A stretch of DNA of 63,434 nucleotides, filler included, from Reticulomyxa filosa (lineage: Eukaryota > Protista > Foraminifera): the NCBI GenBank assembly GCA_000512085.1. It is 16 parts of 16 records of this genome, joined end to end, with 100 filler letters (N's around TTAATTAATTAA, not from the genome) between each part and the next. Parts side by side here need not be neighbours in the genome. Positions count along the whole stretch, not along the records: positions 5,956 to 9,731 come from ASPP01003742.1; 15 more parts are not named here. The stretch is one strand, 5' to 3'. Of this stretch, positions 5,561 to 9,731 are shown piece by piece (the stretch's first letter is position 1; every line of letters starts with the position of its first letter). The notes below the pieces were generated by a model. That model ran no database searches. It had not been told where the DNA came from and was given only the letters and a program-made list of their open reading frames with translations. The position numbers and the translations under genes were made by a program.

Positions 5561-6413
5561 CATCCAATCAATCCGAATCCAAAATTGCTAATGTGCAAAC
5601 TCAAAACACAAACAAACATATTCGCATTTATCCACGACACACAAAGACAAAAAATTACTTACTTTATGTTGGTATCCCGCGCGGGAATAATCATTTTAAA
5701 TATATAAAAAAATTAATTATTTTAAATCTCAATTTTTTTCATTTATCATCTTTGTTCTTTTTTCTTTTTTTTTTCTTTTTTTCTTTTTTCTTTTTTCTTT
5801 TTTCTTTTTAGTATCACTTTTTTTTTCTTATTACTACATTTATTTTTTTTTCTTCNNNNNNNNNNNNNNNNNNNNNNNNNNNNNNNNNNNNNNNNNNNNT
5901 TAATTAATTAANNNNNNNNNNNNNNNNNNNNNNNNNNNNNNNNNNNNNNNNNNNNAAATTGTGGCATCAATTTTAATTCATAACGTTCAATTATTATCTC
6001 CTTACCCTCTCCTCCTCTTCTTTCAAAGCCTTGCACAATTTCGCTGCACTAGCTTGTTTCTATATCAGTTTTTTTTTTTTTTTTTTTTTTAATAGTCTAA
6101 TTTCTTTTATTCCTTTCATTAATGCAGGATATTCTCTGCACTATTGGTGTAAATATTTTATTCAATCAAAGAAGGTGCCAAAATATAGCACGTTTTTTTT
6201 TTGGACTTGGAGTATTTATAAATTTGCATTGATTTTAATCTGTTGCTTATCCTTCATTTGTCAATTCAAGCGGTCTCGATCCCAAACAAAAAAGAACCAA
6301 CCTCTTTCAGTTTGTTTTTTTTCTTTTTGCAACGAAAGGAGATACGAAAAACTCCAAATAAAAAAACTTTCCGGGAATTTCGAAGCAAACATATTGAATA
6401 ATTTGAAGAAAAA

Positions 6414-9007
6414 ATGTCATTCAAAGCGTGCCTGAATGATGGAATAAAAGTGCATACACTACTGTTAACAGAATTGACCATTAAAAATTTAAAACAGCAA
6501 GTCACGCAAGCGTCCCGATCAACACAGGTAGACTCCGTGCTGGTAACAATAACAGATGGAAATGGTTGTTATGTTGAAACTGACAAAAGTGTAGCAGATG
6601 TATTTGCAAAGGAGCCAGTGTATTTTATTGCTCACTTTCAACCAAGTTTCTTTCCTTGTTGTAAAGCGATGTGTGTTTGTGTTGTGTTTGAGATTGACTT
6701 GCAACACTTACATAAAACAATCAAGTAGAAGAGACCCAAAAAAAGGACAACATTGTGAAAGAAAAAGAATATGAGAAAGAAACGCCAGCGTCATACAAAA
6801 TAAAAAATCCATTGGTGTTATTGGCAGGAGCAATGAAACAGCAACACTGGTATTTTAAAAGCGTACAGAAAGATCTTGATTTATTGCAAACTTTATTTCA
6901 ATCGAAATTTGGTTATCAAGTGTTTAATGCTTATCGTTTGCCAAATGTATTCAAAGAATCATTCAGTTTGGATGGACTCAATACATTTCTTTTGGAACAT
7001 TGTTTGGACGTGGCGGACTTTGAAAAAGATGGCAGCAATTCCTATGATGGATTGATCTTTGTATGGTATCGTGGACATGAAGAATATGAAAGCGAAGACG
7101 AATCATTGCACATCAACAACATAGACCCGAAAGATATCCAAGACATTTTTGCGGAGCAAACTGCATATTTTGTGGGAAAGCCAAAGATATTTATCAATAT
7201 TGCTTATGTTGAGCAAGAGCAATACAATTACATTGCAACCAATTTGGAAACCCAAAACAACAGCAATAATAATGTGTGGCGACACCATCAGGACAAAGAT
7301 ATATTTACAATTTTTGTCATGTCCACAACGAACAGTTCAGAAAGTGACAGTGACAGTGACAATGACATAAAAGAGAGCTGTTTCACAAAAATGTTTTGTC
7401 AGATTGTTGAAAAAAACATCACCAAACGTCTGAACGTTATTTTGAATCATGCCATTGGGACTACGCTTGAGCAAACATTGAACAGAGAGATTGCACAGAC
7501 TGGTTCGATGGCTCAGTCTGAAATTTATCTCATCTCGTCCAGTCCGGTTCATTCACGTAATCAAGATAATCATGGAGATGCAGAGATTAAATGTGCAGAG
7601 ATGGCAGAAATGAAAGAAGAGGAAAAGGAGAGGGATAACAGCGTCACAGAAACTTTGGATTTCAAAAAATACTGGAACAGAAAGTGGAGAAGATGCAATG
7701 CAGAAGCGACCAAAATAGTTAGACAGATGCTTGACCAACACGAGCAGGGATTGGTGATGGTTGTGTATGGCTCCTTTCGATGGAAAAATCTGAAAGACAA
7801 ATTTGCTGCATTTATTGCATTGGTGAACAATGACAATGTGGAACAAAAACAGTTTGAAGAATACTGGTTATATGTGATCAAAAGAAAAGTGATAGTATTG
7901 GACGCTGTAAATATTGATGGAAATGTATATGCTGTCGATTGTGAAATTCAGTGTAAAGGGAGCGTAAACATAGCCATACAACTCTTTGTGACAAAGAATG
8001 CGATGATCGATCCAGTTTTGAAACGATCCATTGCACCTATTCAATGGAACACTCAAATGCATCACGACATTCCAGTACAATTGCAGGCCTTTGAAGATGA
8101 TGAAGAAAAGTGCTCGGAAAAAAAACAGTTTGATATTGCCATCATTCACTTGCAAAAACATTTGCAAATTGCTATTGACCAATTTGGATTGCATCATCCT
8201 TATGTTGCAATTTCGTACAATATGATTGGAAATGCACATTATTATAATAAGCAATATGACAAGTCAATTGAATTCTATGAAAAGTCATTGAAATCCATCT
8301 TGAGCATCTTTGGTACAAATTATTCGATTGTCGCACAATTGTATCACAACTTGGGAAACACATACAATGACAAATTCCAGTATGAAAAGGCAAACGAATG
8401 TCATGAGAAAGCTTTGAAAATCAGATTGAATATTTTTGGGGAAACTCATGTTGATGTCGCTTGGTCATATATTAGTGTTGGAAATGCATTCTTTAATAAA
8501 AGTCAATATTCGCAGGCCATCGAATTTTATGAAAAGTCCTTAAAGATAAGATTGGATATTTTCGGGATCGACAATGTTGATGTTGCTTGGTCATATCTCA
8601 ATATAGGCAATTCTTATTTTAATAAGGGGCACTACAGCCAAGCCATTGAGTCCTATGACATGCTATTAAAAATTCGATTGTTAATTTTTGGTGTTGATAA
8701 TATCGACGTCGCTTGGGCAAACAACAATTTGGCAAATGCTTATCAAAATGACGGACAGCTCGTCAAAGCGATTGAATATCACCAGAAAGCACTGGAGATA
8801 CGACGAAGGATACTTGGGAAGGTGCACAAAAGTGTTGGAGATTCGTGTTGGCGATTGGCTCTGGCGTTTCAACAAAGGGAAGACAAAGCAACTGCTCGCA
8901 AATATTTTGAAGAGGCATGGAAAGTTAACAGCGTATTGCTGGGAGAATGGCACGAACAAACGTGGGAAGCAAAAAGAAATGTCGAATTGAATAATACATC
9001 CTCATGA
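6414..9007 (+). CDS. Ubiquitin/PB1-like + caspase-fold (peptidase C14-like, Cys->Tyr) + unknown domain + TPR array protein (~836 aa, 2 exons)
   Basis: Exon 1 (6414-6645) splices in frame to exon 2 (intron 6646-6725/6728). Caspase-like motifs are YDGLIFVWYRGHE, FVGKPKIFINIAY and DIFTIF..STT...SCFTKMFCQIV. The C-terminus has 42-aa kinesin-light-chain-type TPRs (VAxSYxxIGN...AIEFYEKSLKIRLDIFG). Confidence 0.85.
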
Positions 9008-9384
9008 CAACAAGGCAAAATGGGGTTGTCCAGTTTGTTTAATACTTGGTGTGGTTATTTTTTTTTTAATAAAAGCATTTGGCTCTGTACGTAATCTATA
9101 AAACCGAAAATAGGCGATTTTTTCAATAAAATAAAATAAAATAGCGAAGTTCTATTACTAACTCGATACAGTCAATTTATTTATATCAAAAGAAAAACTA
9201 TAGACCTATTATAAAAATGGAATAAATGTTCATCTTGTTCTTTAGTGTCCAATTAAATGAAAAATATAATAATGAAGATTAAACATTTGGTACAGACAAA
9301 GGGATAACTACAGATATAGTTTGATTTTCAAAAGTTGAAGTCGGATAATAATAATAATAATAATAAATAAATAAATAAAAAGAA

Positions 9385-9731
9385 ATGCGGCAGACACCAA
9401 CAACACGTTCGTATTCAGTTCGACCATCTTTACAAGTGAAAACACCAGAAGCATTGCTAAAGACGGCCGAGAGTATAAAATCGCTGGGAAGGAAGGGGAC
9501 GGATGGAGCGCCTTCATCTTCGCGAGTGCGTGCAAGTACAGTATCAAAGACCCCGTCTACAACCTATAATAACATGATGAAGAAGGGATCTGTGGAGGAC
9601 AATATACTGTTCGATTACAACGTGTTTATTACGTCATGGCAAGACAAGATACGAATGAAGCATTACCATAAGTGTGAAGAGTATTGTCGCAATAACATCC
9701 AATTGCTATTGAACGCAGAGCAAAAGATGGA
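9385..9731 (+). CDS. Hypothetical protein, 3'-truncated by the contig end
   Basis: ATG-initiated open frame of protein-like composition running into the spacer; no recognised motif. Confidence 0.45.

What the first reader, a model, noticed from the sequence alone, without database searches (positions are those of the whole stretch)
6414..9007. Candidate innate-immune/death-signalling receptor: Ub/PB1-like - caspase fold - novel domain - TPR sensor
Seen: one spliced ~836-aa protein with a ~77-aa N-terminal module (TITDGNGCYVETDKSVADVF, resembling the acidic motif of PB1/CIDE-N beta-grasp domains), a caspase-like p20/p10 fold, a ~145-aa unknown domain and a TPR array. Known: effector-adaptor-repeat layouts define NLR-type receptors, and caspase-fold/TPR fusions act in bacterial cell-death systems. 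Inference: this is an NTPase-free receptor in which TPRs sense a ligand and the N-terminal modules drive oligomerisation and caspase-fold signalling. I know of no characterised system like this in rhizarian protists.
Basis: partly seen in the sequence, partly recalled or inferred. Interest (0 to 1): 0.8.

Follow-up and report, generated by a model that had tools for sequence, protein, structure and literature searches.

The report
Foraminiferal PB1-like pseudo-caspase TPR protein
This is an intact gene of the amoeboid foraminifer Reticulomyxa filosa. Its protein joins a PB1-like oligomerisation module, a caspase-type domain that has lost its catalytic cysteine, a domain with no known relatives and a TPR repeat array, and it belongs to a large family found only in this organism whose function is untested.

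Summary

- **N-terminal module (aa 1-77).** It folds with high confidence (pLDDT 96) as a beta-grasp. The best structural matches are Par3-NTD, NBR1 and Bem1 PB1 domains and CIDE-N.
- **Caspase domain (aa ~86-349).** It is homologous to animal-type caspases: the family profile hits Dronc at 2e-5, and 11 of 35 paralogues hit PF00656. The nucleophile Cys is Tyr237; His194 is kept. Only 3 dyad-intact caspase domains were seen (46 tabulated plus 5 extra paralogues; "ACRG" in all 3). So this protein is predicted to be a pseudo-caspase.
- **Middle domain (aa ~381-530).** It is the best-conserved module and folds well (pLDDT 83). It has no PDB or ESM-Atlas match. In 1.84 billion representative proteins it has 120 relatives. 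Eight of the ten checked are R. filosa; two weak repeat-type hits come from an unnamed sequencing run.
- **TPR array.** Six 42-residue KLC-type units plus a cap.
- **No NTPase domain.**

The modular, NTPase-free, strongly expanded architecture is real. Proteolytic signalling by this member is not supported, and an immune or death role is untested. No RNA run was listed, so the splice rests on paralogue comparison.

The parts
6414..6645 (+). Exon 1: start ATG plus the PB1-like beta-grasp N-module (aa 1-77) and the first base of codon 78
   Evidence: The ORF starts at the first ATG after a stop. It is 77/77 identical to P0001. AF2 pLDDT is 96.1 with beta-grasp topology. Foldseek finds Par3-NTD, NBR1-PB1 and CIDE-N. 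The module is present in 31 of 41 paralogues.
6646..6728 (+). Intron: 83 nt, phase 1, GT...AG. A second in-frame AG at 6724-6725 gives a NAGNAG-type alternative acceptor.
   Evidence: Sequence. Only this intron reproduces P0001's junction ..HFQP-K-ETQKK. A homologous phase-1 donor A|GTTTC lies directly after the N-module in paralogue loci L002 and L001. No RNA reads were available.
6729..9007 (+). Exon 2, through the stop codon at 9005-9007
   Evidence: Open frame. It is 758/759 identical to P0001 residues 78-836.
6752..7543 (+). Caspase-homologous domain (aa 86-349), predicted catalytically inactive
   Evidence: The family profile A1 hits Dronc at 2e-5 and caspase-3 at 4e-3 in PDB. PF00656 is hit by 11 of 35 paralogues. 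Paralogue P0108 scores 63.6 bits against a cutoff of 21.4.
7076..7078 (+). His194, aligned with the catalytic His of caspases (motif VWYRGHEE)
   Evidence: Alignments; translation.
7205..7207 (+). Tyr237 (codon TAT) at the position of the catalytic Cys (GKPKIFINIAYVE against caspase KPK....C(R)G)
7637..8086 (+). Orphan middle domain (aa 381-530). It is the family hallmark and an alpha/beta domain with a conserved IDGNVYAVDCEIQC...QLFVTKN...W motif.
   Evidence: Alignment A3. AF2 pLDDT 82.6 and pTM 0.76. No match in Foldseek PDB (best E 0.37), VIA wide (maximum Z 4.0) or the Atlas (TM at most 0.45). It has 120 relatives in 1.84e9 representatives; 8 of the 10 I looked up are R. filosa and 2 come from an unnamed sequencing run.
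8129..8968 (+). KLC-type TPR array: a capping half unit (aa ~545-572) and six exact 42-residue units (aa 573-824)
   Evidence: Pfam TPR_12 2.4e-49 and TPR_10 2.4e-40.

Best explanation
RFI_04082 is a functional-looking member of a Reticulomyxa-specific multigene family. Its layout is a PB1-like beta-grasp, then a caspase-type domain, then an orphan alpha/beta domain, then KLC-type TPRs.

Shown:
- The four modules and their order.
- True homology of the second module to C14 caspases.
- Tyr in place of the catalytic Cys in this protein and in most paralogues, while a few paralogues keep an intact His/Cys dyad with an 'ACRG' motif.
- Absence of any NTPase domain.
- Restriction of the middle domain to this organism in the databases searched.

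Inferred:
- The protein is a non-catalytic assembly or regulatory subunit.
- The TPR array binds a protein or peptide ligand.
- The PB1-like module drives head-to-tail homo- or hetero-oligomerisation with paralogues, taking the role that CARD/DED prodomains play for animal initiator caspases.
- The dead caspase domain acts as a binding or dimerisation surface. It could pair with, or compete against, the few catalytically intact paralogues, much as cFLIP does with caspase-8.
- The invariant middle domain plus TPR is the core unit of the family. The caspase module is optional, since 27 representatives are PB1-mid-TPR.

The process served is not determined. It could be defence or cell death, self/non-self recognition in a fusing syncytium, or trafficking.
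For: - Identity with RFI_04082 and the exon structure.
- Family-wide conservation of all three non-TPR modules.
- Caspase homology.
- Dyad census. The His column is Y in 26, H in 13 and other residues or a gap in 7; the Cys column is Y in 27, C in 3 and other residues or a gap in 16, of 46 domains. Only P0108 is H+C in that set. P0131 and P0132 are also intact.
- At least 12 state changes at the Cys column on the family tree, with C->Y members nested inside the 100%-supported clade that holds the intact ones.
- Flanking motifs stay conserved despite the loss of catalytic residues. YDGLIFVW and KPK are conserved, with P152 and K153 invariant. Tyr recurs at both catalytic columns. Together these argue for a maintained, repurposed fold rather than decay.
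- The N-module is PB1-, Par3-NTD- or CIDE-N-like by four routes.
- The TPR array.
- An intact 836-aa ORF with a confident fold for both modelled domains.
Against: - There is no expression or splice evidence, because no RNA run was listed.
- Oligomerisation, ligand binding and pairing with active paralogues are inferences from fold similarity only.
- The query alone does not reach any Pfam caspase or PB1 threshold.
- The caspase domain was not modelled structurally here.
- Many family members are partial gene models, so the architecture counts are approximate.
- A conserved Cys just before the His column (VWC-G[HY]G) in most paralogues leaves open a non-canonical activity in them, although the query has Tyr there too.
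Confidence: 0.6

Rival explanations
1. One reading: an active, NTPase-free innate-immune or death receptor. TPR ligand binding triggers N-module oligomerisation, and the protein's own caspase domain then signals by proteolysis.
For: The sensor-like repeat, oligomeriser and caspase layout is real. The family is large, lineage-specific and diversified, as is typical of conflict systems. A few paralogues keep the full dyad and an ACRG motif.
Against: This protein has Tyr237 in place of the nucleophile. Only 3 caspase domains are seen to keep the dyad, out of the 46 tabulated plus the 5 extra paralogues. The caspase module is dispensable in 27 PB1-mid-TPR representatives. No immune context, induction data or hypervariable or homogenised repeats were found.
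Confidence: 0.12
2. A cytoskeletal, trafficking or polarity scaffold. KLC-type TPRs bind cargo or motor-associated proteins and the PB1-like module polymerises as in TFG or Par3. This would serve the very active microtubule-based transport of the reticulopodial network rather than defence.
For: The TPRs are of the kinesin-light-chain type (TPR_12, TPR_10, TPR_NPHP3). The top structural neighbours of the N-module include Par3-NTD, TFG and Par6, which are polarity and trafficking proteins. That R. filosa is known for rapid bidirectional organelle transport is my own background knowledge, not a tool result.
Against: KLC-type TPRs are equally typical of STAND/NLR-like proteins. Nothing links the caspase or middle domain to motors. 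More than 100 diverged paralogues is unusual for a housekeeping scaffold.
Confidence: 0.18
3. A decaying or non-functional copy in a duplication-rich genome. On this view the architecture is inherited but this locus no longer does anything.
For: The catalytic residue is lost. Many paralogue models are partial or fragmentary. No RNA evidence was listed. The query deviates from the family consensus at VWC-G (it reads VWYRG, with a one-residue insertion).
Against: A 2.5-kb reading frame is uninterrupted apart from one canonical, positionally conserved intron. All structural motifs are conserved and both modelled domains fold confidently. Paralogues are only 36-48% identical on average, yet the domain cores are kept, which points to long-term constraint.
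Confidence: 0.08

Closest known systems
Animal initiator caspases and the pseudo-caspase cFLIP (peptidase family C14A)
   Same: The protease domain is homologous: the profile hits Dronc and caspase-3. The GKPK(I/L)F strand leads to the nucleophile position, and a GSYFTE..FC motif matches caspase GSWFIQ..LC. Intact paralogues carry 'ACRG'. An N-terminal homotypic-interaction prodomain precedes the protease domain. Active and catalytically dead paralogues coexist, as caspase-8 and cFLIP do.
   Different: The prodomain is a PB1-like beta-grasp, not a death fold (CARD/DED). An orphan domain and a TPR array follow the protease domain in the same chain. Dead copies are the large majority. The S1 Arg of the small subunit is not evident in the alignments (by eye).
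PB1 domains (p62/SQSTM1, NBR1, Bem1, Par6, TFG), Par3-NTD and CIDE-N
   Same: The fold and size are those of a beta-grasp, with TM 0.72-0.79. There is a weak profile hit to Bem1 PB1 across the ..ITDxxGxxIETDxxL.. segment, which resembles the acidic OPCA region. A Lys in strand 1 (SFKAC/SFKAY) sits where type-B PB1 domains carry their Lys.
   Different: No member reaches the Pfam PB1 model; only weak GRHL1_C, CIDE-N and Ubiquitin_4 hits appear. The acidic motif is only partly acidic. No interaction data exist.
Bacterial caspase-fold/TPR proteins (CHAT-TPR, for example Csx29 of type III-E CRISPR 'Craspase')
   Same: A clan-CD protease fold is fused to TPRs in one polypeptide. This comparison rests on my own knowledge, not on a tool result.
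   Different: The protease family differs: no CHAT hit appears in any scan. The domain order is reversed, TPR being N-terminal in Csx29. Csx29 has no beta-grasp and no middle domain. Most members here are non-catalytic.
STAND/NLR-type receptors with TPR sensors (NB-ARC-TPR, NACHT-TPR, NPHP3)
   Same: The logic is tripartite: N-terminal effector or adaptor, central domain, C-terminal KLC-type TPR array. The TPR_NPHP3 model gives a partial hit. The family shows lineage-specific expansion.
   Different: There is no P-loop NTPase. The central position is held by a domain with no detectable similarity to any known fold.

Membership tests
Peptidase C14 (caspase family) | Sequence or profile homology to the caspase/hemoglobinase-fold protease domain | tested here: met
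   The family profile A1 hits Dronc at 2e-5 and caspase-3 at 4e-3. PF00656 is hit by 11 of 35 paralogues, best 2.9e-10. The query is 29-45% identical to those paralogues. The query alone has no PF00656 hit at E up to 10.
Peptidase C14 (caspase family) | Catalytic histidine | tested here: met
   His194 (VWYRGHEE) falls in the His column, next to a one-residue insertion.
Peptidase C14 (caspase family) | Catalytic (nucleophile) cysteine | tested here: not met
   Tyr237 (NIAYVE) aligns with Dronc's Cys in KPKVLMFPFCRG.
Peptidase C14 (caspase family) | Predicted or solved 3D fold matching a caspase structure | not tested
   Both structure-prediction jobs went to the two unknown modules, so the caspase call rests on profile evidence only.
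PB1 domain (PF00564) / PB1-like beta-grasp | Ubiquitin-like beta-grasp fold of about 80 residues | tested here: met
   AF2 pLDDT 96.1 with E3-8, E13-18, H23-33, E42-48, H57-64, E70-76. TM 0.64-0.75 to Par3-NTD and NBR1 PB1. TM 0.72-0.79 to PB1 proteins in the Atlas.
PB1 domain (PF00564) / PB1-like beta-grasp | Match to the PB1 sequence model | tested here: not met
   None of 29 family N-modules hits PF00564 at E up to 1; the list shows GRHL1_C (7 members), CIDE-N (1) and Ubiquitin_4 (1). The profile against PDB gives Bem1 PB1 at only E=0.0065.
PB1 domain (PF00564) / PB1-like beta-grasp | OPCA acidic motif and/or conserved strand-1 lysine mediating front-to-back pairing | tested here: inconclusive
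   The motif ITDxxGxxIETDxx(L/V) and K4 (SFKAC) are present. The acidic cluster is weaker than canonical OPCA. No interaction test was possible.
NLR/STAND receptors | Central P-loop NTPase (NACHT or NB-ARC) | tested here: not met
   No such Pfam hit appears on the whole protein or on the middle domain of 39 members. The middle-domain model matches no NTPase.
KLC-type TPR repeat proteins | Tandem 42-residue TPR_12/TPR_10 units | tested here: met
   TPR_12 2.4e-49 and TPR_10 2.4e-40. Six gap-free 42-aa units span aa 573-824.
CHAT-TPR proteins | CHAT-type protease domain | tested here: not met
   No CHAT family appears in the listed Pfam hits for the query or for 35 paralogue caspase regions.

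The most novel reading that the evidence does not exclude
Foraminifera may possess a single-chain, NTPase-free 'sensor-polymeriser-caspase' system. TPRs would recognise a ligand. The orphan middle domain would act as the conformational switch or oligomerisation hub that a NOD provides in NLRs and Apaf-1. PB1-like filaments would replace death-fold filaments. The many Tyr-substituted pseudo-caspases, such as RFI_04082, would then recruit, template or restrain the few dyad-intact paralogues (P0108, P0131, P0132). That would be an independently evolved apoptosome- or inflammasome-like death or allorecognition machinery built on true caspase-type proteases outside animals.
Probability: 0.15. Interest if true: 0.85.

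Novelty: new variant of a known kind. Interest (0 to 1): 0.55.

Why it matters
Caspase-type (C14A-like) proteases are usually treated as an animal invention. Their presence in Reticulomyxa has been noted (PMC5982838), but without any account of what the proteins look like.

This work shows three things about them. They sit in a distinctive multidomain architecture, with a beta-grasp prodomain and a TPR tail. The family has expanded to well over a hundred diverged copies. Nearly all copies have replaced the catalytic dyad, typically with tyrosines.

This gives a natural system for asking how caspase scaffolds are activated and regulated without death-fold adaptors or NTPase hubs. It also supplies a confidently folding domain with no known relatives, which is worth solving. 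Finally, it is a caution for phylogenies that use Reticulomyxa 'caspases' as outgroups, because many of them are pseudo-enzymes under different constraints.

Tried and rejected
- **Direct searches with the query.** Pfam scans of the query's N-terminal 470 aa at E up to 10 found nothing. A PDB sequence search with the query found only chance integrin hits.
- **Middle domain.** The profile against PDB and Pfam gave only noise. Foldseek PDB, VIA wide, the Atlas shape search and the Atlas feature search gave no credible match. The weak cluster of deaminase-fold rows (Z at most 4.0) was rejected: it lies below the stated noise level, and the conserved Cys and His residues sit in strands, not at helix N-termini.
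- **RNA evidence for the splice.** No RNA run was listed.
- **A continuous ORF in paralogues.** I looked for a paralogue in which the N-module and the caspase domain lie in one ORF. P0009 looked continuous by tblastn, but the ORF listing showed a stop inside its intron, so this was rejected.
- **TPR repeat homogenisation or hypervariability as a receptor signature.** Unit identity within a protein is barely above that between proteins, so this is not informative.
- **Extra N-terminal regions of some paralogues** (P0003, P0037, P0053, P0059, P0078). No convincing domain was found. Kelch motifs in P0094 and P0068 may be fusions with neighbouring genes.
- **Relatives outside R. filosa.** Two word-index searches returned R. 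filosa only. One exhaustive profile search returned 120 hits; 8 of the 10 looked up were R. filosa and 2 were weak repeat-type hits from an unnamed sequencing run.
- **Joined model.** The joined sequence used in tools is the database record P0001 returned. Otherwise the exons were searched separately, by reference.
Full report
**What the piece is.** The range 5956-9731 is a complete 3,776-bp contig of the freshwater foraminifer Reticulomyxa filosa. A word-index search with the long ORF returned a 100% identical 836-aa protein, "hypothetical protein RFI_04082" (P0001), whose longest contig is 3,776 bp. Coding G+C is about 0.32-0.46, and the flanks fall to 0.24-0.30.

**Gene model.**
- Exon 1 starts at the first ATG after a stop (6414) and runs to 6645, which is 77 codons plus one base.
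- A GT at 6646 and the AG at 6727-6728 define an 83-nt phase-1 intron.
- Exon 2 (6729-9007) is open to the stop codon at 9005-9007.
- This model, and only this one, reproduces P0001's junction ..HFQP-K-ETQKK. Exon 1 matches 77/77 residues and exon 2 matches 758/759.
- An AG three bases upstream (6724-6725) is also in frame, giving a NAGNAG-type alternative acceptor.
Where a joined sequence was needed I used the database record P0001 by reference; otherwise the exons were searched separately.
- No RNA run was listed for this stretch, so read laying was not used and the splice is not confirmed by reads.

Comparative evidence supports the splice.
- 31 of 41 paralogue models carry the same N-module directly ahead of the caspase-like region.
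- In the genomic loci of two paralogues, the same donor context A|GTTTC sits in phase 1 immediately after the last strand of the N-module: L002 at 3232|3233 and L001 at 2213|2214.
- In L002, this donor combined with the annotated acceptor gives an 84-nt intron and a junction parallel to ours.
- The published models of those two paralogues use other donors, giving 51-nt and 26-nt introns, and read T-rich intron-like sequence as protein. They are probably slightly mis-annotated.

**N-terminal module (aa 1-77).**
- A 29-sequence family alignment (A2) gave an AlphaFold2 model with mean pLDDT 96.1 and the strand/helix order of a beta-grasp.
- Foldseek against PDB ranks these on top, all at probability 0.99-1.00: Par3-NTD (4i6p, TM 0.74-0.75), the AtNBR1 PB1 filament (6tgn), ISG15/ubiquitin, DFF40/45 CIDE-N and FSP27 CIDE-N (4mac, TM 0.72, rmsd 1.9).
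- The family profile hits the Bem1 PB1 domain in PDB at E=0.0065, across the segment ..LKQQI..vlvkITDxxGxxIETDxxL.
- Pfam gives only weak beta-grasp hits: GRHL1_C in 7 members, and CIDE-N and Ubiquitin_4 in one each. None hits PB1 itself.
- The ESM-Atlas model of this part matches PB1 proteins (NLP7, TFG, PHOX1-like, Par6, Bem1) at TM 0.72-0.79.
Membership of the PB1 sequence family is not established.
- Nearly all the best neighbours are domains that pair front-to-back into oligomers or filaments. That is the basis, by inference only, for proposing oligomerisation.

**Caspase-like domain (aa ~86-349).**
- The query alone hits nothing.
- A profile of 35 paralogue segments (A1) hits Drosophila Dronc (E=2e-5) and many caspase-3 entries (about 4e-3 and weaker). 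No metacaspase or paracaspase chain is among the 60 rows shown.
- 11 of 35 paralogue segments hit PF00656, best 2.9e-10. Paralogue P0108 scores 63.6 bits against a cutoff of 21.4.
- The HMMER alignment to Dronc places the family's ..GKPKIFIKITY.. over KPKVLMFPFC. The nucleophile Cys therefore corresponds to a consensus Tyr.
- It places ..VWCGYG.. over ..LMTHG.., so the catalytic His also corresponds to a consensus Tyr.
- In RFI_04082 the His column holds His194 (VWYRGHEE, 7076-7078). The Cys column holds Tyr237 (NIAYVE, TAT at 7205-7207).
- Across 46 family caspase domains, the His column is Y in 26 and H in 13. The Cys column is Y in 27 and C in 3. Only P0108 (GHG ... KNACRGN) has both catalytic residues.
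- A follow-up search found two more intact paralogues, P0131 and P0132, both with ..KNACRGN...
- On a quick maximum-likelihood tree the backbone is unresolved. The intact sequences lie in a 100%-supported clade, with C->Y members nested inside it. At least 12 changes are needed at the Cys column and 16 at the His column.
- Despite this, YDGLIFVW, TSD and KPK (P152 and K153 invariant) stay conserved. The fold looks maintained while catalysis has been given up repeatedly.
- RFI_04082 is thus predicted to be a pseudo-caspase.
- I did not model this domain, so a structural match to C14 remains formally untested. The profile evidence makes the homology secure.

**Middle domain (aa ~381-530).**
- It is the best-conserved module, with mean pairwise identity 0.48 against 0.44 for the caspase domain and 0.36 for the N-module.
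- It is present in all 41 first-round paralogues.
- Near-invariant residues include W, N, A and the G of ..EQGL.., the motif IDGNVYAVDC.IQC, Q.F.T, and a late W.
- AlphaFold2 gives pLDDT 82.6 and pTM 0.76, with the core above 90. The layout is a long helix, a strand, two helices and then a six-strand beta meander.
- No search identifies it. Foldseek PDB has a best E of 0.37. VIA wide has a maximum Z of 4.0, below the tool's stated background. The Atlas shape search gives TM at most 0.45. The Atlas feature search had no usable hit. Profile searches against PDB and Pfam gave noise.
- An exhaustive HMMER search of 1.84 billion representatives found only 120 proteins at E up to 0.001.
- Eight of the ten I looked up, including distant ones, are R. 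filosa. The other two are weak, repeat-like matches from a sequencing run (SRR5664279).
- Foraminiferal genomes are scarce in public data, so 'Reticulomyxa only' may mean 'not yet sampled elsewhere'.

**TPR array.**
- Pfam TPR_12 (2.4e-49), TPR_10 (2.4e-40) and a partial TPR_NPHP3 hit mark kinesin-light-chain-type repeats.
- They form a capping half unit and six gap-free 42-residue units (aa 573-824).
- Family members carry 1-17 such units.
- Units within one protein are barely more alike than units from different proteins (0.33 against 0.30). There is therefore no sign of recent unit turnover.
- Variable positions fall on helix-A surface positions and loops. This is what any TPR family shows and does not test ligand sensing.

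**Family architecture.** HMMs of the three modules were run over all 130 proteins collected by that point. Their TPR tails are recorded.

| Architecture | Representatives |
|---|---|
| PB1-like, caspase, mid | 35 |
| PB1-like, mid | 27 |
| caspase, mid | 14 |
| mid only | 44 |

Many of the last two groups are partial models. The invariant core is therefore the middle domain plus TPR. The caspase module is optional. No NTPase, death-fold or TIR domain appeared among the Pfam families listed; the 25 commonest of 48 were shown.

**Literature.**
- Klim et al. 2018 (PMC5982838) reported 'caspase-like proteins of Reticulomyxa' grouping with animal caspases.
- Later papers repeat this and use one of them as an outgroup (PMC10959488, PMC10565124).
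- In the passages I read, none describes the domain architecture, the family size or the dyad loss. Full-text searches for Reticulomyxa with caspase, metacaspase or tetratricopeptide found nothing further.
- The R. filosa genome paper did not turn up in my searches and was not consulted.

**Reading.** The most economical explanation is a non-catalytic assembly or regulatory subunit.
- The TPRs would bind a partner.
- The PB1-like module would mediate front-to-back association with paralogues.
- The Tyr-substituted caspase fold would serve as a binding or dimerisation surface, possibly towards the rare intact paralogues.
- The orphan domain would provide the family-specific core function.
- Which cellular process this serves is open.
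It is not supported for proteolysis by this member, and it has no direct evidence.

Noticed in passing
window 9385-9731 (+): A second gene starts at ATG 9385, after a 377-bp AT-rich spacer that includes (ATA)7 at 9345-9366. It stays open to the contig edge (at least 115 aa) with G+C 0.44-0.46 and no Pfam hit.
   Followed up: partly
window 6724-6728: There is a NAGNAG-type tandem acceptor (caAG|tAG). Both AGs keep the frame. The annotated one (6728) gives ..P-K-E.., and the upstream one would give ..P-I-E-E... The downstream TAG is also the in-frame stop of the unspliced exon-1 ORF (104 aa).
   Followed up: partly
L002:3232-3316 and L001:2213-2295: The paralogue models P0009 and P0002 use 51-nt and 26-nt introns and translate T-rich sequence. 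The donor homologous to ours (A|GTTTC, phase 1) lies upstream in both. In L002 it gives a clean 84-nt intron. In L001 it does not fit the annotated acceptor's frame, which may reflect a frameshift or an assembly error.
   Followed up: partly
P0108, P0131, P0132 (R. filosa RFI_05058, RFI_03073, RFI_30807): These paralogues keep the GHG and KNACRGN motifs, so their caspase dyad is intact. They are the natural candidates for active partners of the pseudo-caspase majority.
   Followed up: partly
P0042 (RFI_16440); 27 PB1-mid representatives such as P0034, P0040, P0044, P0046: One model carries two middle domains and is probably a tandem pair fused by annotation. A whole sub-family lacks the caspase module altogether.
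   Followed up: no
P0099 and P0129 (SRR5664279-derived proteins): The last ~43 positions of the middle-domain profile match 16 and 6 times in tandem in two unnamed proteins from a sequencing run. In my own domain scan of P0129 the matches recur every 55 residues. This hints that the C-terminal beta hairpins resemble a repeat unit used elsewhere.
   Followed up: no
window 7343-7367: An (AGTGAC)4 microsatellite encodes the SDSDSD run in the variable loop between the two halves of the caspase-like domain.
   Followed up: no
L001:3933-5453; L002:1-1170; P0094 and P0068 N-termini: Next to paralogue P0002 lies another ORF with KLC-type TPR similarity (tblastn). Kelch-repeat genes or segments lie next to, or are fused with, several family members.
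   Followed up: no
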